Shown here one piece after another: positions 29,482-46,400 of a stretch of DNA of 64,000 nt. Origin of the DNA: Trichoplax adhaerens (lineage: Eukaryota; Animalia; Placozoa); NCBI RefSeq assembly GCF_000150275.1, contig NW_002060947.1, positions 852,695 through 916,694 on the forward strand, in the 5' to 3' direction. The position numbers and the translations under genes were made by a program. The notes under the pieces were generated by a model. The model saw only the letters and a program-made list of their open reading frames with translations, was not told where the DNA came from and made no database searches. Every line of letters starts with the position of its first letter. Position 1 is the first letter of the stretch.

Positions 29482-29629
29482 AGCATTTAAAGATGAGCTA
29501 ATTTTCTGAATGAAATTAGACCCAACAGTAGGGTCTAGTAACCCTGTTGTTGTTTACTTGTTCCACCGGCGATTGAGCTTGTACACTTTGGCCATCTTGT
29601 TATCTATTTCAAGTAAGATAGCCATCAAA

Positions 29630-31135
29630 ATGATGCAACTTTTACACATGGGGTGGTTGCCTCCGATCTCCACTCCAAGTATTCTCATCGCAAGCTTTCT
29701 TGGCTTGATAACTCTTGCATTATACCGGTATTTTATCGCTCCTTATCGACGACTCCGTCAATTAGGCATGAAAATTCCACGACCGATACCTTTATTAGGC
29801 AACATGTTCGATTATGGACCAACAAACCAACATGATGCTCAAGTTAAGAGACAACAAATATATGGCAACCTTTATGGAACACTCTTTTTCCATATACCTA
29901 CTATATGGATTGGCGATCCTGACATATTAAAGTCAATAACGGTCAAGGAGTTTTCCAACTTTACCAATCGTTTCGCCTTAAATCAACCACGTCCACCCTT
30001 CGATAAAGCAGTTATACAATTGAAGGATCAAGATTGGAAACGCGTAAGAACAATTCTTATACCTACCTTTAGTACTTCCAAATTGAAAGCAATTGTGCCA
30101 CTGATTGAAAGCGCTGGCGACGATCTCATCCAGACGTTATCAACAGCTGAAGAAAAAGGGAGAGTAATCGATATATGGCGTACTTGTGGCGTATTTACAA
30201 TGAAAGTGATCCTAGCTACGGCATTCGGTATCGATTTCGAGTCCAAAGAGCAAGAAAAGAAATTAACTGAATCTGCTGGTGTACTATTTCGTAACATAAA
30301 TGGTGTTTTGCAATTTTTATTTGTATTTTTTACACCGTTATTTCGCTTACTCGAGCCTTTACTCGGTGGTAAAATAATTTCTTCTGTAAAGTACTTGGTT
30401 ACAACAACGGAAAATGTCTTGAAAGAAAGAAGAAGAAATTTAAAAGATGGTATCCCTTGCCGAAGAGATATTCTACAACAAATGATCGAAGCTGGTGATA
30501 ATGACAAGCTCACTGACGAAGAAATTATTGCTCAAGCTATTATTTTTCTGGTCGCAGGTTATGAAACTACTGCTAATACACTGGGATTTGCATCATATTT
30601 ACTGGCTACAAATCCAGATGCACAAAAGAAATTAAGAGATGAAATTGATTCACTCTGTCCTGATGCAAATTCAATCGACTACGATACTCTATTCAGCTTA
30701 CCTTACTTAGATATGGTCATTTCCGAAACATTACGAATGTATCCTCCAGCTTTCTTTATTAATCGTGAAGCTAGAGAAGATATTACTATTAATGGTCTAC
30801 TTATTCCTAAAGATGTCATGGTTGGTTTTCCTATTTACGCAATTCATTATAATCCTAAATTATGGCCTAAGCCTAATGAATTTATACCAGAACGCTTTTC
30901 ACCTGAAGAAAAAGCTAAACAGATACCGTGTAGCTATCTACCATTTGGAGGAGGTCCACGTAATTGTATAGGAATGCGGCTAGCATTATTGGAAGCTAAG
31001 TTAGCCTTGGTTAAGATTATACAAAATTTCGAATTGAAAACAGTAGCCGAGACGGAAATACCACTAAAGCTACGAAGTGGAGCTACTCTATCTCCGCTTA
31101 ACGGTGTATTCGTTGGCCTAAGCCGAAGATCTTGA
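29630..31135 (+). CDS. Cytochrome P450, clan 3 (CYP3-like), copy 1, intronless
   Basis: N-terminal anchor and Pro-rich hinge, WKRVR, I-helix AGYETT, ETLR, PERF, heme motif FGGGPRNCIG. The ATG at 29630 gives 501 aa, matching copy 3; the ORF track starts further upstream at 29510. Confidence 0.96.
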   Translation: MMQLLHMGWLPPISTPSILIASFLGLITLALYRYFIAPYRRLRQLGMKIPRPIPLLGNMFDYGPTNQHDAQVKRQQIYGNLYGTLFFHIPTIWIGDPDILKSITVKEFSNFTNRFALNQPRPPFDKAVIQLKDQDWKRVRTILIPTFSTSKLKAIVPLIESAGDDLIQTLSTAEEKGRVIDIWRTCGVFTMKVILATAFGIDFESKEQEKKLTESAGVLFRNINGVLQFLFVFFTPLFRLLEPLLGGKIISSVKYLVTTTENVLKERRRNLKDGIPCRRDILQQMIEAGDNDKLTDEEIIAQAIIFLVAGYETTANTLGFASYLLATNPDAQKKLRDEIDSLCPDANSIDYDTLFSLPYLDMVISETLRMYPPAFFINREAREDITINGLLIPKDVMVGFPIYAIHYNPKLWPKPNEFIPERFSPEEKAKQIPCSYLPFGGGPRNCIGMRLALLEAKLALVKIIQNFELKTVAETEIPLKLRSGATLSPLNGVFVGLSRRS

Positions 31136-32848: not shown

Positions 32849-34336
32849 ATGTGGGGGCTGCCTCAACTCTCTATTCAAAGCTTTCTCATTACAAGCTTTC
32901 TTGGTTGTATTACGATAGTGTTATATCGTAATTTCATTGCCCCTTATCGACGACTCAGTCAATTGGGACTTAAAATTTCGATGCCTACGCCTTTAATGGG
33001 TAACAATCTGGATTATGGATCAACTAACCAACATATTGCTCAGATAAAGAGACAAGAAATGTATGGTAAGATTTGGGGGACACTCTTTTTCCATATACCT
33101 ACTATATGGATTGGCGATCCTGACATATTAAAGTCAATAACGGTCAAGGAGTTTTCCAACTTTACCAATCGTTTCGCCTTAAATCAACCACGTCCACCCT
33201 TCGATAAAGCAGTTGTACAATTGAAGGATCAAGATTGGAAACGCGTAAGAACAATTCTTATACCTACCTTTAGTACTTCAAAATTGAAAGCAATTGTACC
33301 ATTCGTTAAAGGCGCTGGCGACGATCTCATCCAGACGTTATCAACAGCTGAAGAAAAAGGGAGAGTAATCGATATATGGCGTACTTGTGGCGTATTTACA
33401 ATGAAAGTGATCCTAGCTACGGCATTCGGTATCGATTTCGAGTCCAAAGAGCAAGAAAAGAAATTAACTGAATCTGCTGGTGTACTATTTCGGGATATTA
33501 GTGGTATTTTACAATTCCTGGTGATATATTTCACGCCAATGTTTGCTCTTCTCGAACCTTTACTCGGTGGTAAAATAGTTTCTTCTGTAAAGTACTTGGT
33601 TACAACGACGGAAAATGTCTTGAAAGAAAGAAGAAGAAATTTAAAAGATGGTATCCCTTGCCGAAGAGATATTCTACAACAAATGATCGAAGCTGGTGAT
33701 AATGACAAGCTCACTGACGAAGAAATTATTGCTCAAGCTATTATTTTTCTGATCGCTGGTTATGATACTACTGCTAATACACTGGGATTTGCATCATATT
33801 TACTGGCTACAAATCCAGATGCACAAAAGAAATTAAGAGATGAAATTGATTCACTCTGTCCTGATGCAAATTCAATCGACTACGATACTCTATTCAGCTT
33901 ACCTTACTTAGATATGGTCATTTCCGAAACATTACGAATGTACCCTCCAGCTTATTTTGTTAACCGTGAAGCTAAAGAAGATATCACGATTAATGGTCTT
34001 CTTATTCCTAAAGATATTATGGTCTGCTTCCCAATCTATGGTATTCATCATAATCCAGAATTATGGCCTAAGCCTAATGAATTTATACCAGAACGCTTTT
34101 CACCTGAAGAAAAAGCTAAACAGATACCGTGTAGCTATCTACCATTTGGAGGAGGTCCACGTAACTGTGTAGGGATGCGATTAGCTTTGCTCGAAGCAAA
34201 GTTAGCCTTGGTTAAGATTATACAAAATTTCGAATTGAAAACAGTAGCCGAGACGGAAATACCACTAAAGCTACGAAGTGGAACTACTCTATCTCCATTT
34301 AACGGAGTATACGTCGGTCTAAGCCGAAGAAATTAG
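32849..34336 (+). CDS. Cytochrome P450, clan 3, copy 2, intronless
   Basis: 495-aa ORF with AGYDTT, ETLR, PERF and FGGGPRNCVG. Confidence 0.96.
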   Translation: MWGLPQLSIQSFLITSFLGCITIVLYRNFIAPYRRLSQLGLKISMPTPLMGNNLDYGSTNQHIAQIKRQEMYGKIWGTLFFHIPTIWIGDPDILKSITVKEFSNFTNRFALNQPRPPFDKAVVQLKDQDWKRVRTILIPTFSTSKLKAIVPFVKGAGDDLIQTLSTAEEKGRVIDIWRTCGVFTMKVILATAFGIDFESKEQEKKLTESAGVLFRDISGILQFLVIYFTPMFALLEPLLGGKIVSSVKYLVTTTENVLKERRRNLKDGIPCRRDILQQMIEAGDNDKLTDEEIIAQAIIFLIAGYDTTANTLGFASYLLATNPDAQKKLRDEIDSLCPDANSIDYDTLFSLPYLDMVISETLRMYPPAYFVNREAKEDITINGLLIPKDIMVCFPIYGIHHNPELWPKPNEFIPERFSPEEKAKQIPCSYLPFGGGPRNCVGMRLALLEAKLALVKIIQNFELKTVAETEIPLKLRSGTTLSPFNGVYVGLSRRN

Positions 34337-37058: not shown

Positions 37059-38564
37059 ATGATAAAAATTTTCGACTTTTTGTGGCTGCCACAGCTATCT
37101 ATTCAAAGCTTCCTCTTTGCAAGCTTTCTTGGCCTGATTACCATTACATTATACCGTAATTTTATTGTCCCCTATCGCAAGCTGAGCAAATTAGGAATTA
37201 ATGTTTCACCACCTATGCCTTTATTAGGCAATATGCTGGATTATGGTTCCACTAATCGACATATTGCTCAAGTAAAGAGACAAGAATTATATGGCAATGT
37301 CTGCGGAACATTATTCTTTCACATACCTAATCTGTGGGTTGGTGATCCCGAAATGTTAAAGATAATAACAGTCAAGGAATTTTCTAATTTTGCTAATCGA
37401 TTTTCTTTGACTAAACCGCGTCCCCCTTTTGATAAAACAGTGGTACAATTGAAGGATCAAGATTGGAAACGTGTAAGAACAATTCTTATACCCACCTTTA
37501 GTACTTCAAAATTGAAAGGAATCATGCCACTTATTACCGACGCCGGCGACAATCTCATCAAGACGATGTCAAAAGCTGAAGAAGAAGGAAGAGCAATCGA
37601 TATGTGGCGTACTTGTGGTGTATATACAATGAAAGTTATCCTAGCCACGGTATTCGGTATCGATTTTGAATCAAAAGAGCAAGAAAAGAAATTAACTGAA
37701 TCAGCTGCTAGGTTATTTCGTAATACTAATGGCGTTATACAATTCTTTTCTATATTTCTTACCCCACTATTTCGCATGGTCGAGCCTCTACTTGGTGGTA
37801 ACTTAGTCAAGTCGACCATATACTTAGCTAAGACAGCAGAAAATGTCTTGAGAGAAAGAAGAAGAAATTTAAAAAATGGTATCCCTTGCCGAAGAGATAT
37901 TCTACAACAAATGATCGAAGCTGGTGATGGTGACAAGCTCACTGACGAAGAAATTATTGCTCAAGCATTTATCTTTCTGATCGCTGGTTATGATACTACT
38001 GCTAATACACTGGGATTTGCATCATACTCACTGGCTACAAATCCAGACGTGCAAAAGAAATTAAGAGATGAAATTGATTCACTCTGTCCTGATGCAAATT
38101 CAATCGACTACGATACTCTATTCAGCTTACCTTACTTAGATATGGTCATTTCCGAAACATTACGAATGTATCCTCCAGCTTATTTTGTTAACCGTGAAGC
38201 TAAAGAAGATATCACGATTAATGGTCTTCTTGTTCCTAAAGATATTATGGTTAGCTTCCCAATCTACGGTATTCATCATAATCCAGAATTATGGCCTAAG
38301 CCTAATGAATTTATACCAGAACGCTTTTCACCTGAAGAAAAAGCTAAACAGATACCGTGTAGCTATCTACCATTTGGAGGAGGTCCACGTAACTGTGTAG
38401 GGATGCGATTAGCTTTGCTCGAAGCAAAGTTAGCCTTGGTTAAGATTATACAAAATTTCGAATTGAAAACAGTAGCCGAGACGGAAATACCACTAAAGCT
38501 ACGAAGTGGAACTACTCTATCTCCATTTAACGGAGCATACGTCGGTCTAACCCGAAGATATTAA
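37059..38564 (+). CDS. Cytochrome P450, clan 3, copy 3, intronless
   Basis: 501-aa ORF with AGYDTT, ETLR, PERF and FGGGPRNCVG. Confidence 0.96.
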   Translation: MIKIFDFLWLPQLSIQSFLFASFLGLITITLYRNFIVPYRKLSKLGINVSPPMPLLGNMLDYGSTNRHIAQVKRQELYGNVCGTLFFHIPNLWVGDPEMLKIITVKEFSNFANRFSLTKPRPPFDKTVVQLKDQDWKRVRTILIPTFSTSKLKGIMPLITDAGDNLIKTMSKAEEEGRAIDMWRTCGVYTMKVILATVFGIDFESKEQEKKLTESAARLFRNTNGVIQFFSIFLTPLFRMVEPLLGGNLVKSTIYLAKTAENVLRERRRNLKNGIPCRRDILQQMIEAGDGDKLTDEEIIAQAFIFLIAGYDTTANTLGFASYSLATNPDVQKKLRDEIDSLCPDANSIDYDTLFSLPYLDMVISETLRMYPPAYFVNREAKEDITINGLLVPKDIMVSFPIYGIHHNPELWPKPNEFIPERFSPEEKAKQIPCSYLPFGGGPRNCVGMRLALLEAKLALVKIIQNFELKTVAETEIPLKLRSGTTLSPFNGAYVGLTRRY

Positions 38565-41500
38565 AGTGACAGTACTAACCGTATTAATAAATCGATCAAT
38601 AGTGCACATACATGTAACATAATGCTTCTACAGAAATAACTTGATATATGTTTGAATATGATCTAATGTTCATGAGCAAACAGTATGTGCATTGCTAGAT
38701 TCTAGAAATTATGGATATTGGGCTACGATTTTTATCTTTACCGTTTCATTATTGCTATCTCATTAATAGTTGTAACCACAATTACAGTATTATGGACATG
38801 CTGTAAGCTAAGAAGAGTAGTATAGTAAGAATGTGGCTTAAAATACTTATGATTAAGCCTTTCAATCTTTCTAATAAAGCTAAACCAGGTCATTAACAAA
38901 TGCATTAATCATAATTATATTATTAGTACTTACTACAACCTGGGATAATGTCCTTAATCGGTAGTTACTGGTAGCACAGGTAGAGTAACCAGCACCGTTA
39001 TACTCGTATATCTGGTAATGCATGTTATATGAGATCTAACAAATTAGCACCAATACATACAAGAAAATCGAATGGCCCTTCAGTATAGCATCGCACGCAA
39101 TTTAGAGTTTGTAATGTTATTACCCAATCATAATAGCATAGATGCCCATTATGAATTTCGAGTATCAGTTTTAATTTGCGTTAGATAATAAATTTTACTT
39201 GGTCTTTTCGTACGCACTACTCATACCTATGGTTTACGAACTTTTATTAAATTCCTACTAGCTTGTACAATGTAAATATGATACCTTTAGCCTTAGGGTT
39301 AGCATCCATTCATAGTAAATTAAATTTTACGATGAAAACCCTTAACCTTAATATTATTTTAAGTCGTCTATATTTGCCATAAAAATGAATAGGTATTGTA
39401 TTGATATAATATCGTTGAAGGATATTTTATTATTTGAAACACTTAGGCCTATCTTAGTCTATATTTAGCTTAATCTCTTAATGTAATGTAATCTCGGTTG
39501 CAATTATGTTTAAGCCAAGATAGATAATTCTTATATTATTTAATATGATTTTTTTATATAAATTTGACAAGAGAAACATTTATCAACAATTTGTTAGTCT
39601 TCTCTATCTTATATCGTACCAGGCTATAAGGATTACTACCTAAAAAAACACCTACATGATTACTCATAGCTTATATAAAGCGCGGATTTCAAGAAAGAGG
39701 CCATCAAACACCTTTCGAGTGGCATATTACTTTTGTACGAGTATATCGTAAATATGCGATTTGTCTATGGTAGATGATATGACATAATTATACGATTGCA
39801 ATATAGTAAACGTTGGACTGTGTAATGATTTAGATACATTTTTGCCAGTATTAGTTAAAGTTTCTCTCATTTTCACATTATAAAATTTTGATAACAACTT
39901 CATACGACATAGCTATTTACTTACAGCTTAAGTACTTACATACAGCATCATCTTATTAAGGAGAAAACATGTTTTGAAACGAATCGTAAAAGAGGGGCTA
40001 TGATATTGAATAGGCTATTATTCATTGTTAGATGTTATGCTGCTCTTGTTGAATGCAAAAACTCTATTTTCAAAGTTCAATTTCATTGTTATCCAATCTT
40101 TTATTTTATAACAAATCTACTAATTTATATTACATTATTTGCGAAATTAAAATAATATTAAGAAACAGTAAGATAATTAACTATTATCTTTGAATTATTA
40201 ATTAATCGAAAACTTTAATCAGACTTATAGATAAGCTGTACTAACATGAATTTATTAACGCACAATTCTTTGTTTGAAGAAAACAAGAAGTCAGATTAGA
40301 GGAGAAAAACGAAGATAGCATGCTGTTTTGATTCCTACTTTACTGATGATAGCTCAATATAGGCAAAAATTCACTATGCTTGGCTCTTACAAGTACTTTT
40401 AAAGTAGTCAATAGAATCATAGTTTATAAGAATCGATAAATTCTGTTACAGAGCCAAAAGTTGTCCAAAGACATAAAGCAGGAGTTAAACTTGTTCCAAC
40501 ACACATCTTTTATAATATTTTGTTGAAACAAAGCTTTACAAAGGATATTTTTGTCGTTTAATATTAATAAATTCTTCCTTAGATCCATATCAAGTAAAAT
40601 CTGTACTGCAGTAGGCTAGAGATTTAGAAAGCTTCTTTTCTTTGCGATAAATGGTCCTACTCAAGGTATGTCTAGTAGAAGTAAAATATATTATGCTAAA
40701 ATTGGAGGTCATAGAGACAATCTGTGGCACTCTTAAAGACTAGAAATAACTTAATCAGGTCCCCATATATACCATTAAAAACCGCCTTTTAAGGCCACTA
40801 AAAAGTCAACTGAAAAAACTCATTTTTTACACAATCATTCAGGTAACAATTTTTTAATTTAGTATCACATATTAATCGTTAATTACTGGTTATTAACCAT
40901 AAATTAGTTATTAAGGACGAAAAACGAAGGTTTCATAATCTAAATATTAACAAACTTCACAGCACAAGAGACTGGATTATAGCGAAGTAAAGTTACTTTC
41001 AAGTAGTAATTTAATTTCGTTGCGCGTGTGATCAGTGCTCTGCTAAGACCTCTTTAATCAGACATTCTACTGTTTTTTCTTCTCCTCTGTTTCCTTATCA
41101 TCCTCGAGTTATGACAACTTTGACAGACTCGCATGCTTAGCTAGGCGATTTATGGATCTCACAGTATCACAGTAGTAGCGATAAATTTTTATAATTCCGT
41201 TAGAATTGACTACAAAACCGAATATATTGATATTAAAATGAAACTACTCGTACTAAAGTATTACAGAGAGTTTGGGTTTAAAATAATTATTCTAGTATGT
41301 CTATCATCATCTACAATTAGCTTCAGTTTTAAACACTTACGGTAGTACTACGATAATAAGATTATTTTGTAAAGTAATTGAGAATTCATACACAACTAAG
41401 TCAGAAAGTTCACAGAATGAGATTTTAGCACAATCCTATTTGCCTAATAAATTATATAGCATACGCGTACATCTCTGGAAACCTACGCATGCACATGTAA

Positions 41501-41861
41501 AGAATTATAGTGATTTTCTTAATTTACTTACAAAAGTTAATCAACACCTACAAAGTTTCATACAAGCGGTAACTTACACCCAGTTACTGGTTAGTCTAGC
41601 AGTTGAAATATAATTGATTGCAGACAAAAGTTTCCGTTTACCGTGATGTAGTGGACAGATATAATTCTGTATGTGTCACGCAAGTGAAAAATTAACATTT
41701 CTAGGTAATGTTTATGCGTATATGACATAATTTCTTAATAATCTAAGATCCAAGCAACATATCACAACATTTATTTTAGCATAACGTATTAGATTAAATG
41801 TAGAATCTTGCATAACTTTTCTGATCTTGAACATAGGATTGTTTCCGAAGATTAAGTAAGC

Positions 41862-42722
41862 ATGGAAAACGCCAGTAGGGAACAAAATTCTCAGCCTATT
41901 GGAAAGAAGGAGCATTCCGTCATAAATGGCAGCATTAAACGCTCAAAAATTACGTATCACCCAATCACTACGGCACTTTTAACAGTTTATGGATTTCTGA
42001 AATTGATTTATTTACGTTTTGGTGGAATGCTTTTCTATCCAAGTGATTATTTTGAAGCAGCCAATTTTGTGGATGGTCTTTTTGATACAGCTGGCCATCG
42101 AAACGAGATATCAAATTGGAATGTACTGAAAAGAAATTTATTTAATACCCAAGCTCTAGTAGCTATAGCTCAAGAAAGATATCATGTGGTAGGCTATCCA
42201 TACGTTGGAAATGACGCTCCAGTTGGTAAACTCTACACCTTAAAAGGTGAGCTAACTAATTTAGCAACCATTTTCCAGCAATCTTCACATTCTGTCCATG
42301 TACTGAACTTTGGATCATATAGCTGACCTCCATTTCGACAGAGTATCGATCGATATATCCAATTGGTCAATCGTTACAGCGCAAATGCTTCTTTCTTAAC
42401 CATTTATATTGCTGAAGCTCATGCATCAGATGATTGGAATATGCCTGATCTGAATAGTGCATTGGGTATAAATATAGCAAAGCCAAAGACTTTAGAGGAT
42501 AGAATTCGCATTGCTGAAAATTTTATTCTGGATTATAATTACGATATACCAATGTACGTCGATTCCATCGATAACGATACTATGGAAGCTTACGGTGCAA
42601 GACCTGAAAGGTTGTACATTATAGTCAATGGAAAAATTGCCTATAAAGGTGGGCCTGGTCCATACTGTTTCAGCTATAGCTCTCTGGAAGAATCGTTACT
42701 AAAAGTTTTAAAGCAGCTTTAA
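41862..42722 (+). CDS. Iodothyronine deiodinase-family selenoprotein, 286 aa, Sec (TGA) at 42324-42326, intronless CDS
   Basis: Track ORFs 41862-42326 and 42363-42722 are in the same frame. Readthrough gives VLNFGSYS-U-PPFRQ, then YIAEAHASDDW, TLEDR and YGARPERLYIIVNGKIAYKGGPGPY, which are deiodinase signatures. There is an N-terminal hydrophobic segment and a downstream SECIS. Confidence 0.94.
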
Positions 42723-43404
42723 GTAAAAGCTAATCAATTACTTAAAACTGCTGCACTATCAAACTATGAGCATGAAAAATATCGAGAGCTACATAATATA
42801 TGTAAACGGCGAGATTGATTCTGATTCAATATTGGTTAGATTAATTTACGAACTGTCGATATCAGCAGTTGTCGCTTAAACGTAAAAAAATGGCTCTATA
42901 TGATAGGAGGTTGATTAGTTATTCATTGTTTAAAAGCTAGCCTAGTTAGGACTTCAAAATTAGTGGCTTGGACTAGAATTTTTTCTACATCTAGAATACC
43001 TAAATACTTGATTATTAAATGCTTAGATATGCCAAAAGAATTTTTGTAACGGTTAAATTTTGCATATCTATAGTGGCTCTGATCCAATAGTATTTGTATT
43101 TTATTGTAACACTAAACTCTAAATAAGGGATACACTAATTTTTACATGTTGGAAGAAGTCCATTTCTGACATGTTCATTTATGCATCCCTGAAAACGATA
43201 ACGCAAGTAATTTAGATGTTAGCGTCCATCTGAGAGCATAGTCGACTATCTTACACCTTTAACATGATATCAGATTAGAAGCTTGATATAATCTAAGATC
43301 TTGATAGTATGGTACTTTACTTATAGTAAGATTGTAGTTGTAATCTAGTAGTAAAATTTATAATTCAATCAAATGCAAATGCTTCTGCTAGAATATATAC
43401 ATAG

Positions 43405-43496
43405 GCATGTTCTTGTTTCTAATTAATGATGCTGTTATGCTTCAATCTGTTCTGAAATGCAGAGAGCAACAGCTGATGCAGTAAATAAGGGCATGT
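43405..43496 (+). promoter_or_regulatory. Eukaryotic type II SECIS element in the deiodinase 3' UTR
   Basis: Helix I CATGTTCTTGTTT (43406-43418) pairs with AAATAAGGGCATG (43483-43495) using G-U pairs. Core ATGAT (43426-43430) / TGAT (43474-43477). Helix II GCTGTT(AT)GCTT / GAGCAACAGC. Unpaired AA at 43444-43445. Apical mini-stem TCTG/CAGA. AATAAA at 43573-43578. Confidence 0.88.
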
Positions 43497-46400
43497 AGGT
43501 ATTTTTTCTAGCAAATTTTTGTCACCATGCGATATTGCTTTTGAGAAATGCATCATTTCTAATTGTTATGGCAATAAATACTGATAATCACTGGTACATA
43601 TTTTAACCCAATTTTTATACCCAATTTACTCTAAACTGGAATTATACAGTAAACTTTAATGAAAATAAAGGCTTTCATGGCTTTAAATCTATTTCGGAAA
43701 TAATTAAATGAAAGTATCCATTTCTGCTCCAGCCCATCCTGCTCGTCATGTGAGAACCTCGTATTTCGTTATTATACATGTAAGTGATTTCACCACTTGA
43801 TATTGCTCTTTAATATCCTATTTCGGCAGCTATGACCAAGAATCACTAAACTCAACCTATAGATGCTGTAAAGAGTTCTCGATTTAGGGAATTAGTAACC
43901 CACGGATAAACTACAACCAGAAGGCATTATCATAAGTTGCTGCAACCACGCAAATACTAGTGGCTAAATAAGCACCGGGAAAAGCCGCTAAACGATTGAT
44001 TATTTGTACATTCTAAACAGCGCAATCATCCTTACGTATAGCATACTGTATGACGATATTTAACGCTAATCTTACATTTACAGAACAACGATTCATCGAA
44101 ATCTTAACACTAAATAATCGTATATATCGTTGTTCTAAACATACGGAGGTGTAAATACCGTAAATAGGAAGTAAATGAGTATCGTGTAAGTGAATCATTA
44201 TTTTAATATGCGGAAATTGTGAATAAACGAGAAAGAAGCGATCCTTTCATGATATATTGAAATCCAATATAGTAATGTGGCAATGTAGATCTTCATACCT
44301 TGCAAAACTGTACGAAAAGTTAGCTTAGAATTAATTATTCCGTAGTTACTGTAAATGCTAGCTATAATTTCTGACAGTCCTTACTGTATTTGGCGTGTAT
44401 GAAAGCAATTTTATTGAACTACTGTTGTTACTGTAAGCATCAAAGTATTGTCCAACTTATTGCTATATAAAGAGTATACGTCTTCTATACCCTATCTTTA
44501 AATACTAATCTAAATAATACCATGTTAGGCTACCGTACTGTACCTAAATATGGCGGTAGCATCTCGTATCGTATAAATTATTAAGTATAAATACACATGT
44601 AGATATAGATAGATGTCCAATCAGTTATGCCGTTAATACGCAGCTACATATTGACTTGATTATATATAGATATTAAAAACTTAATTCACTATAAGCCAAT
44701 GCATCTGTCAATAAGTAAGTTATCGAGCTTGGCTTGTCCAAGTCAAATCGTTCCATAATCAATAGCCAAGTCATATCTTATGATTTTTTGATTCTGTCAT
44801 TCAAAACTTTTATTGAAAAGGAGAACCTTTGACCTTATAATTTTTCTGGCTGCTGATTATATTTTTATTGATGTAAAATATCAATTTCATTTTCTTGCGT
44901 CCATAATTGCTTTTCGGTTAATATAATTGTCTGGTTATATTACGACATTATGTTACATTCTGTGATATAGTCTCAATATAAGATACGACAAATTATCATT
45001 TCCTGGCCATCAATAGAGGCGAATTTATTCTACGATCTTACAGATGCTTGTTGATGTAATCGCGATTGTAAATGTAGAGAATTTTATTAGGTAACAGAAG
45101 TAGAGATAGAGAAGTACTACAATACTCTAAATTAAAGTCCTTATAATGTAGTTTAGGAAAGAATTTCTTCATTCTATCTAGAATAGCTGGTTTAACAACA
45201 ATAGGATTAGCAGACAAGTGGAAATAATTAATTTCGTAATAGCCGATGCTACAGCGGTAAAAAAAATTAATGCAAACATTTCTGAAAAAACTACACGAAG
45301 CTAGTAAGATAAAAATTTTCGACATATGTGTATTGTTATCCCATCTAATAGCATTACATAATTTCTGTCATTGACATATTTTACCTCTTTCTTTAAGTAC
45401 TGTATTAATTTATCTATCGGGTACTTATTTTGCTTTCATATAGACATTAACTTGATAATACAAAATGGACGTAACTATGAGAATATAATAACAGTTAGAA
45501 GACACACAGTATTTTGTATACAGCATTTTGTTATCCACTAATCACTACTTTACCTTATAACATCTCGTTGTTGTTAGAATTGCTAATTGAAGCTCGTTAT
45601 GCTAGCTAAAACACTCGTGAGGTAGCTCTAGGTATACTGATTCAACTTCTATAGAGCAGAAAGCAAAATGCAAATCATCAGGAAATCATGTATGTGTAGC
45701 AAGCTGCTGGCTGGAGAACCTCAGTACAAGTTCAGTAAAGCATTACGTAACGTTCTGTTGGGGTAGAAGTTTAACATTTTCAATTTTTATGGTACTGCAA
45801 TAATATTTACTCTCCAAACTGTGACCTCCTACCATATGAGTATAGTTATTAACCTTTCGATACATAAACCTGAGAATATGAGAAAGTGTAAATAAAACTA
45901 GAATTCAAGTCCTAGGCAATGTCAACAAATAGCTACATTGCTACCGGTAACTACCTAACAATAATAAAAGCCCGGAACCTTGGCTATATCGGCCTATATG
46001 GCTAACCTGATGAGTTTTCATTCAGGGCCCATATAAGTAATTAATACCAATTTTATGCAAAATATCTACGACAAGTATGAAGGCAACATTAACTGCCTAT
46101 AAATGATTACGTGATCCAATACGTAATAAATCGGACTCTGATGACTTGATATGAGATGGTTATCGGGATAAAAAATCTCTTTGGGTTAGAAAGTTTATTC
46201 GCGTAATGCTACGAAACTAGAATTTATTAATCTAAGTTATGTTAACTAAACGGAGCCATGTTAAATGTCAGCTTCCTAGTTCTAGAATGTTGACCATACC
46301 TAAAATAAGCTGCCGTCAATAAAATCTTGCCTCAGACTTTAAGAGGATTAAAAATATCAGTGACAGATGATGAAAGGCGGAAAATACAACATTAGACATC

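What the first reader, a model, noticed from the sequence alone, without database searches (positions are those of the whole stretch)
41862..43496. Hidden selenoprotein: two ORFs are one deiodinase read through UGA, with its SECIS about 1.1 kb downstream
Seen: TGA 42324-42326 sits exactly at the Sec position of the FGSxxUPPF motif, and the frame stays open to 42722. A complete type II SECIS fold (AUGA/GA core, AA motif, three helices) lies about 700 nt after the stop and before AATAAA 43573. Standard gene callers would truncate the gene or invent an intron here.
Basis: partly seen in the sequence, partly recalled or inferred. Interest (0 to 1): 0.8.

Follow-up and report, generated by a model that had tools for sequence, protein, structure and literature searches.

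The report
Known Trichoplax selenocysteine deiodinase gene
The two ORFs are one intronless deiodinase-family gene of the placozoan Trichoplax adhaerens, with a selenocysteine UGA and its own SECIS hairpin in the 3' UTR; it was catalogued in 2012 as Ta.DI_b, so it is real but not new, although public gene models still splice the UGA out.

Summary

- **Gene.** Window 41862-42722 (+) is one open frame of 286 codons, broken only by TGA 42324-42326. That codon lies in VLNFGSYS-U-PPFR, the Sec position of iodothyronine deiodinases (Pfam PF00837).
- **SECIS.** A type II SECIS at 43405-43496 has AUGA at 43426, AA at 43444 and GA at 43475. It starts 704 nt after the stop and ends before AATAAA 43573.
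- **Organism.** The genome is Trichoplax adhaerens v1.0, not human. It holds 11 deiodinase paralogues, each with one TGA inside the Pfam match; in all ten complete ones it lies in the same motif. The ten complete copies each have a SECIS candidate.
- **Independent support.**
  - A covariance model built without this gene's hairpin finds it as the only significant hit in the 64 kb (34.9 bits).
  - Two more distant orthologue lineages keep the TGA. dN/dS is 0.10 after the TGA and 0.13 before it.
  - The genome has tRNA-Sec and SepSecS.
- **Prior knowledge.** The scaffold and strand layout of the 11 genes matches Table S1 of Jiang et al. 2012 (PMC3473315) exactly. This gene is their Ta.DI_b.
- **Annotation.** Public models TRIADDRAFT_56198 (229 aa) and the Trichoplax sp. 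H2 model (246 aa) each invent an intron that deletes the Sec motif.

First readers of this scan also noted two sister paralogues on the same scaffold. Novelty: already known. Value: an annotation correction.

The parts
41862..42323 (+). CDS part 1 (154 codons). It has an N-terminal tail, a hydrophobic segment at residues 35-53 (a likely membrane anchor) and the start of the thioredoxin-fold domain, and it ends in VLNFGSYS.
   Evidence: Translation. In-frame TAA three codons upstream of the ATG. Kyte-Doolittle maximum of 1.37 over residues 35-53, which is only moderately hydrophobic. 96-100% identical to the N-terminal parts of TRIADDRAFT_56198 and the H2 model.
42324..42326 (+). In-frame TGA, the selenocysteine codon.
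   Evidence: Sits between ...FGSYS and PPFR.... The TGA occupies the same motif position in ten of ten complete paralogues and in orthologues L019, L020 and L021. The PDB DIO2 and DIO3 alignments begin at the next residue.
42327..42722 (+). CDS part 2 (131 codons plus TAA stop), the rest of the deiodinase catalytic domain, including the EAHASDDW, PERLY and GGPGP motifs.
   Evidence: PF00837 E 2.9e-29, profile positions 115-233. DIO2 7.3e-19 and DIO3 1.2e-16. dN/dS 0.10 against the L019 orthologue.
42723..43404 (+). 3' UTR between the stop and the SECIS.
   Evidence: It holds no + strand ORF and only one short ORF overall, a 54-aa TTG-start ORF on the minus strand at 42923-43087. About 55-70% identical to the L019 3' UTR.
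43405..43496 (+). Type II SECIS element. Helix I is 43405-43420 paired with about 43480-43496. The core is AUGA 43426-43429 and UGAU 43474-43477. AA is at 43444-43445. Helix III and the apical loop span 43446-43463.
   Evidence: Fold. R1 68.8 bits. Leave-one-out R2 34.9 bits, E 4.2e-5, the only significant hit in the window. Covariation among paralogue SECIS elements. An orthologous hairpin lies at the same distance from the stop in L019.
43573..43578 (+). AATAAA, the candidate polyadenylation signal, 77 nt after the SECIS.
   Evidence: Sequence. Its use was not tested.

Best explanation
Window 41862-42722 is a single-exon gene of Trichoplax adhaerens for a 286-residue, probably membrane-anchored, thioredoxin-fold enzyme of the iodothyronine-deiodinase family. 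This is Ta.DI_b of Jiang et al. 2012, mis-modelled in public annotation as TRIADDRAFT_56198. Its catalytic residue is selenocysteine, encoded by UGA 42324-42326. By analogy with other animal selenoproteins, the type II SECIS hairpin at 43405-43496 in the same mRNA's 3' UTR would recruit SBP2, eEFSec and Sec-tRNA(Sec), so the ribosome decodes that UGA as Sec and terminates at UAA 42720. Shown here: the gene anatomy, conservation of the UGA, selection on the downstream part, the SECIS class with covariation, and the presence of tRNA-Sec and SepSecS. Inferred: actual Sec insertion, transcript boundaries and reductive dehalogenase chemistry. The natural substrate is unknown.
For: Family and position: PF00837 on the post-TGA piece (E 2.9e-29); read-through match of 119 bits with 1 TGA; PDB DIO2 and DIO3 alignments start right after Sec. 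Conservation: the 10 complete paralogues are only 34-43% identical to this protein, yet all carry TGA in VLNFGSY[ST]-U-PP[FY]R with no other stop. Orthologues L019 and L020/L021 (59-61% identical in the N-terminal piece) keep the TGA. dN/dS is 0.10 after the TGA and 0.13 before it, with dS of 1.6-1.9. SECIS: fold. Across 8 paralogue elements, 87.5% of cells are paired against 21-55% for slid partners, and 6 pairs carry double changes. Leave-one-out model R2 hits only 43414-43488. L019 has a hairpin with AUGA, AA 13 nt on, and GA about 700 nt after its stop. Machinery: tRNA-Sec at 78 bits with anticodon TCA, and a multi-exon SepSecS. TGA is an ordinary stop for the neighbouring P450 at 31133-31135, so the genetic code is not reassigned. 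Identity: P0001 is TRIADDRAFT_56198 on a contig of 8,573,113 bp, the length of C1410. The 11-gene scaffold and strand layout equals Table S1 of PMC3473315.
Against: Rfam's SECIS models gave no hit at E <= 10 for this hairpin or for any paralogue's. The fold z-score is modest at -2.6. The N-terminal piece alone hits neither Pfam nor PDB. The 3' UTR is not more conserved at the SECIS than elsewhere in the L019 comparison, and L019's hairpin has an extra mismatch next to the core and scored only 17.5 bits. No transcript, selenium-labelling or activity data were available.
Confidence: 0.93

Rival explanations
1. The TGA region is removed by splicing, as in the public gene models, and the protein lacks Sec.
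For: TRIADDRAFT_56198 (229 aa) and the Trichoplax sp. H2 model (246 aa) both skip the region.
Against: The two models remove different segments, 57 and 40 codons. The removed part holds the most conserved, invariant motif of the family, VLNFGSY.UPP.R. It stays in frame and free of other stops in all paralogues and orthologues. Without it the enzyme has no catalytic residue. These introns are what a caller that cannot read UGA would produce.
Confidence: 0.03
2. It is a pseudogene, or two unrelated ORFs, and the TGA is a disabling nonsense mutation.
For: Mechanical ORF calling yields two ORFs.
Against: The TGA occupies the same motif position in all ten complete paralogues of this genome and in the two other orthologue lineages. 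dN/dS downstream is 0.10. No other stop or frameshift is present.
Confidence: 0.01
3. The gene is a selenoprotein, but the hairpin at 43405-43496 is not its working SECIS. The real element would lie elsewhere, or this one would be inactive.
For: No Rfam SECIS hit. Function was not assayed.
Against: It is the only SECIS-class hit in the 64 kb under a model that never saw it. It has the correct strand and lies between the stop and the first AATAAA. An equivalent hairpin sits at the same distance in L019.
Confidence: 0.04

Closest known systems
Ta.DI_b, one of 11 Trichoplax adhaerens iodothyronine-deiodinase selenoproteins (Jiang et al. 2012, BMC Genomics 13:446, PMC3473315)
   Same: Same genome release (v1.0, 1,415 scaffolds, about 107 Mb). 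Eleven DI genes. The layout is identical: scaffold_5 (-)(+)(-), scaffold_6 (-), scaffold_1003 (+), scaffold_7 (+)(+)(-)(-)(-)(+), against C1410, C1409, C937 and C1408. This gene is the (+) one on scaffold_5.
   Different: None in kind. The paper's sequences are held only as images, so identity rests on position and strand, not on a residue-by-residue match. The paper reports only 3 strong SECIS in the 6-gene cluster, whereas a paralogue-trained model here finds one for 5 of the 6.
Vertebrate DIO1, DIO2 and DIO3 (structures 9h48 for DIO2; 4tr3 and 4tr4 for DIO3)
   Same: Sec in FGSxxUPPF. EAHxSDxW, ERLY and GGxGP motifs. Thioredoxin-fold catalytic domain. An N-terminal hydrophobic segment. A SECIS in the 3' UTR. 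Intronless, like DIO3 (that last point from general knowledge).
   Different: The motif is S-Y-S-U rather than S-C/A-T-U. Only the post-Sec half is recognisable by pairwise search. The host animal has no thyroid gland, and from general knowledge no thyroid hormone receptor, so the substrate is probably not the same.
Eukaryotic type II SECIS elements
   Same: AUGA and GA non-Watson-Crick core, helix I, internal loop, helix II, unpaired AA 13 nt after AUGAN, and an extra mini-helix.
   Different: Not recognised by Rfam's model at E <= 10. SBP2 binding was not tested.

Membership tests
Iodothyronine deiodinase family (Pfam PF00837) | Profile match above the curated cut-off | tested here: met
   The C-terminal piece scores 102.5 bits against a cut-off of 27. 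The read-through six-frame match scores 119.4 bits.
Iodothyronine deiodinase family (Pfam PF00837) | Sec (or Cys) in the FGSxxU/CPPF active-site motif | tested here: met
   NFGSYS-TGA-PPFR. The PDB DIO2 and DIO3 alignments begin at the PPF following their Sec position.
Iodothyronine deiodinase family (Pfam PF00837) | Conserved Glu/His motif EAHxSDxW and the C-terminal ERLY...GGxGP block | tested here: met
   EAHASDDW, PERLYII and KGGPGP align to DIO2 and DIO3. EAH..D.W, PER.Y and GGPGP are invariant in all ten paralogues.
Iodothyronine deiodinase family (Pfam PF00837) | N-terminal membrane anchor | tested here: inconclusive
   The hydrophobic segment at residues 35-53 has a KD(19) of only 1.37. 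The YG(F/L)xK motif is shared with the paralogues.
Iodothyronine deiodinase family (Pfam PF00837) | Reductive deiodination of iodothyronines | not testable with these tools
   This needs an enzyme assay on the Sec protein or a Cys mutant.
Eukaryotic SECIS element | AUGA...GA core flanked by helices I and II | tested here: met
   AUGA 43426-43429 and UGAU 43474-43477 lie in the internal loop of the minimum-free-energy fold.
Eukaryotic SECIS element | Unpaired AA 10-13 nt beyond AUGAN | tested here: met
   AA 43444-43445 lies 13 nt after AUGAU, in a 3-nt bulge.
Eukaryotic SECIS element | Located in the 3' UTR of a gene with an in-frame UGA, on the same strand | tested here: met
   It starts 704 nt after the stop. 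No credible ORF lies in between: none on the + strand, and only a 54-aa TTG-start ORF on the minus strand at 42923-43087. It lies before AATAAA 43573.
Eukaryotic SECIS element | Structure supported by covariation among related elements | tested here: met
   Six of 13 pairs have double changes, and 0 of 500 shuffles reach the covariation score. The leave-one-out model scores 34.9 bits.
Eukaryotic SECIS element | Match to Rfam's curated SECIS model | tested here: not met
   No SECIS family hit at E <= 10 here or in any paralogue locus. I read this as low model sensitivity, since none of the paralogues' elements is found either.
Eukaryotic SECIS element | SBP2-dependent UGA recoding | not testable with these tools
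   This needs a reporter or 75Se assay.

The most novel reading that the evidence does not exclude
This old paralogue is 34-43% identical to its ten siblings, has an S-Y-S-U site, and sits 3.3 kb downstream of three intronless P450 genes. It might not be a thyroid-hormone enzyme at all. It could be a selenium-dependent reductive dehalogenase or redox enzyme acting on dietary or environmental halogenated aromatics, such as iodotyrosines and algal organohalogens. The 11-gene placozoan expansion would then reflect the ancestral, pre-endocrine role of the deiodinase fold.
Probability: 0.3. Interest if true: 0.5.

Novelty: already known. Interest (0 to 1): 0.12.

Why it matters
As biology it adds little. 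Sec-containing deiodinase homologues in Trichoplax, including this one, were reported in 2012.

The practical value is in annotation. The NCBI/UniProt model TRIADDRAFT_56198 and the Trichoplax sp. H2 model both delete the catalytic selenocysteine through invented introns, and ORF-type callers split the orthologues in two. Analyses that rely on those proteins will therefore mis-read the active site.

The paralogue-trained SECIS model also suggests that more of the cluster genes have SECIS elements than the 2012 paper reported.

What eleven selenium deiodinases do in an animal without a thyroid axis remains open, but this locus alone does not make that question testable.

Tried and rejected
- **Rfam, permissive threshold.** I searched 41000-45000 and seven paralogue and orthologue loci and got no SECIS family hit. 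I treat this as insensitivity of the model, not as evidence against a SECIS.
- **N-terminal piece alone.** It hit nothing in Pfam or PDB. It is paralogue-specific apart from its last 35 or so residues.
- **First SECIS candidate for paralogue L007.** It would not align with the others and was dropped. A better one turned up 657 nt after that gene's stop.
- **Model R1.** It missed the SECIS candidates of L007 and L009, so those rest on pattern and fold only.
- **Genetic-code reassignment of TGA.** Rejected, because a neighbouring P450 ends in TGA.
- **Contaminant or human origin.** Rejected.
- **Sequence match to the paper.** The supplement holds the sequences as images, so I could not match residues.
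- **Read-through protein.** In my own scripts the Sec position was kept as '*' or X.
- **Not used.** The big representative search, structure prediction and fold search were not needed.

Full report
**Observation**

The + strand frame that opens with ATG 41862 runs to TAA 42720-42722. An in-frame TAA lies three codons upstream of the ATG. The frame has a single interruption, TGA 42324-42326, and reads ...HVLNFGSYS-TGA-PPFRQSIDRY.... Mechanical ORF listing splits it into 41862-42326 and 42363-42722, both in the same frame.

- The 131-residue piece after the TGA matches Pfam T4_deiodinase (PF00837) at E 2.9e-29, starting at profile position 115.
- The same piece aligns to the solved catalytic domains of DIO2 (9h48, 7.3e-19) and DIO3 (4tr3, 1.2e-16), beginning exactly at the PPF that follows their Sec position.
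- The six-frame genome search, which reads through stops, gives one continuous match to profile positions 73-233 at E 6.5e-33 with '1 TGA' inside.
- The N-terminal piece alone hits nothing in Pfam or PDB.

**The hairpin**

Window 43400-43500 folds at -32.3 kcal/mol (shuffle z = -2.6) into these parts:

- a 16-bp helix I (43405-43420 with about 43480-43496);
- an internal loop carrying AUGA (43426-43429) opposite UGAU (43474-43477);
- a two-part helix II;
- a CAA bulge whose AA (43444-43445) lies 13 nt after AUGAU;
- a 5-bp helix III with an 8-nt loop.

That is the anatomy of a type II SECIS. It starts 704 nt after the stop and 1102 nt after the TGA. The 700-nt gap holds no + strand ORF and only one short ORF overall, a 54-aa TTG-start ORF on the minus strand at 42923-43087. 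AATAAA at 43573 is one of only two such sites up to 44000. Rfam's SECIS models do not report the hairpin at E <= 10.

**Organism and family context**

The window is G000:C1410:852695-916694 of a 105.6-Mb assembly in 1414 contigs. The word-based protein search with the N-terminal piece returns four hits:

- 'TRIADDRAFT_56198 [Trichoplax adhaerens]' (229 aa), on a contig of 8,573,113 bp, the length of C1410;
- 'Type I iodothyronine deiodinase [Trichoplax sp. H2]' (246 aa);
- two unnamed proteins of 155 and 159 aa.

So the contig is placozoan, not human.

The genome holds 11 PF00837 matches, each with exactly one TGA inside. In the ten complete copies the TGA lies in VLNFGSY[ST]-U-PP[FY]R. Each frame is otherwise open from an ATG to a TAA or TAG, and all appear intronless. 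These paralogues are only 34-43% identical to the window's protein. The invariant columns are the Sec motif, EAH..D.W, PER.Y and GGPGP. A nonsense mutation cannot explain a TGA kept at one position across such old duplicates. TGA is also used as a normal stop by the neighbouring P450 (31133-31135), so the genetic code is not reassigned.

**SECIS class and covariation**

A simple pattern-plus-pairing scan found an AUGA...AA...GA hairpin downstream of every complete paralogue.

Eight of these, aligned as A3, support helix II and helix III:

- 87.5% of cells are paired, against 21-55% when partners are slid.
- 6 of 13 pairs carry changes on both sides.
- 0 of 500 shuffles reach the observed covariation score.

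Model R1, built from A3, recovered all its members and also found an extra element outside the training set.

A model matches its own training sequences by construction. I therefore built R2 from the seven elements of the other paralogues only. Over the whole 64-kb window, both strands, R2's only significant hit is 43414-43488 (+), at 34.9 bits and E about 4e-5. This is the cleanest evidence that the hairpin is a member of the family's SECIS class and not a chance fold.

**Orthologues**

P0004 lies on a 5.2-kb Logan contig (L019). P0003 lies on two short metagenome contigs (L020, L021). All three keep the TGA in the same motif, with an open frame on both sides.

Against L019:

- dN/dS is 0.10 for the 131 codons after the TGA and 0.13 for the 110 codons before it, at dS of 1.6-1.9. 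The downstream part is therefore translated and constrained just like the upstream part.
- L019 has a hairpin with helix I, AUGA, AA 13 nt after AUGAN, and GA about 700 nt after its stop, at L019:4028-4105. Some helix II pairs have changed on both sides.
- That hairpin also has one extra mismatch next to the core and an R1 score of only 17.5 bits.
- The 3' UTRs are 55-70% identical throughout, so primary-sequence conservation does not single out the SECIS.

**Machinery**

The genome encodes a tRNA-Sec (Rfam 78.1 bits; ARAGORN tRNA-SeC, anticodon TCA) and a multi-exon SepSecS gene.

**How it most likely works**

One unspliced mRNA carries the ORF and the SECIS. By analogy with other animal selenoproteins, the SECIS recruits SBP2, eEFSec and Sec-tRNA(Sec), UGA 42324 is decoded as Sec, and translation ends at UAA 42720. 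The product would be a 286-residue thioredoxin-fold enzyme with Sec as the nucleophile.

- Shown: the gene anatomy, conservation of the UGA, selection on both halves, the SECIS class and the presence of the machinery.
- Inferred: actual Sec insertion, transcript ends and chemistry.
- The N-terminal hydrophobic segment (residues 35-53) is only moderately hydrophobic, so membrane anchoring is likely but not established.

**Comparison with what is known**

Jiang et al. 2012 (PMC3473315) analysed T. adhaerens v1.0 (1,415 scaffolds, 107 Mb). They reported 28 selenoproteins, including 11 deiodinases and a 6-gene tandem cluster on mixed strands.

Their Table S1 lists Ta.DI_a to Ta.DI_k as scaffold_5 (-)(+)(-), scaffold_6 (-), scaffold_1003 (+), scaffold_7 (+)(+)(-)(-)(-)(+). 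My 11 matches are C1410 (-)(+)(-), C1409 (-), C937 (+), C1408 (+)(+)(-)(-)(-)(+). Contigs in G000 are numbered by ascending size, so C1410, C1409 and C1408 correspond to scaffolds 5, 6 and 7.

The window's gene is therefore Ta.DI_b. The finding is real but already known. The identification rests on position and strand, because the paper's sequences are held only as images.

**Annotation**

- TRIADDRAFT_56198 joins ...LYTLK to AHASDDW..., deleting 57 codons.
- The H2 model joins ...GNDAP to SIDRYIQ..., deleting 40 codons.
- Both deletions remove the Sec motif.
- ORF-type callers split the orthologues into 155-159-aa and 66-119-aa genes.

**Other notes of this scan**

First readers also flagged the two sister genes on the same scaffold, and the 'atypical' S-Y-S/T-U site. 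I verified the TGA in both sisters, L008 and L009. S-Y-[ST]-U is the norm for all ten placozoan copies and not a peculiarity of this one.

**Verdict**

Novelty is 'already known' and interest is low. The remaining value is an annotation correction and a slightly fuller SECIS inventory for the paralogues.

Noticed in passing
window 29510-31135, 32849-34336, 37059-38564 (+): Three tandem, apparently intronless cytochrome P450 genes (PF00067, E about 1e-107 to 1e-109) end 3.3 kb upstream of the deiodinase. Each carries a 161-aa GTG-start antisense ORF at the same relative position, probably a mechanical by-product of the shared sequence.
   Followed up: partly
L018:4965-5039 and L018:4696-4769 (both -), i.e. 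G000:C1410 about 820.7-821.0 kb: Paralogue L008 (Ta.DI_a by position) has two strong SECIS elements in tandem, 498 and 768 nt after its stop (R1 68.5 and 64.4 bits). Jiang et al. describe a double SECIS for an amphioxus DI, but the text I read does not mention one for this Trichoplax gene.
   Followed up: partly
L014:6154-6225 (-), i.e. G000:C1408:3656153-3656224: An orphan SECIS-class hairpin (R1 52.7 bits, not in the training set) lies inside the 6-gene cluster with no deiodinase ORF upstream on its strand. The nearest minus-strand ORF of 100 aa or more is 131 aa at L014:7720-8115, which I did not examine. It may be a relic of a lost paralogue.
   Followed up: partly
L015 around 4374 (-), i.e. 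G000:C1408:3668270-3668515: The 11th paralogue has the TGA and is intact up to ...EAHAA. It then runs into a run of N (18 X in translation), after which the frame is unrelated. Its 3' half and its SECIS cannot be assessed in this assembly, and R1 found none downstream.
   Followed up: partly
G000:C1408:3653-3672 kb (L014, L002, L006, L015): Jiang et al. report only 3 strong SECIS in the 6-gene cluster. The paralogue-trained model finds one downstream of 5 of the 6 genes: L014:3588-3661 (+), L002:2430-2502 (+), L006:1124-1194 (-), L015:734-805 (-) and L015:8110-8179 (+).
   Followed up: partly
L001 (G000:C937) against L002 (G000:C1408:3659.5 kb): The deiodinase on the 3.4-kb contig C937 (scaffold_1003, Ta.DI_e by position) differs from the cluster gene L002 at only about six residues and has a nearly identical SECIS. 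It may be an allelic or redundant scaffold and not an eleventh locus.
   Followed up: no
L016:6933-6983 (-) and L017 (L009:925-1005 -): The SECIS candidates of the two most divergent paralogues, L007 and L009, are not detected by R1 or R2 and rest on pattern and fold only. L007's has a 9-bp helix II and lies 657 nt after the stop.
   Followed up: partly
L003, L014-L019: Rfam release 15 detects none of the dozen or so SECIS-class hairpins in these loci at E <= 10. This is a practical blind spot for selenoprotein screening in placozoans.
   Followed up: yes
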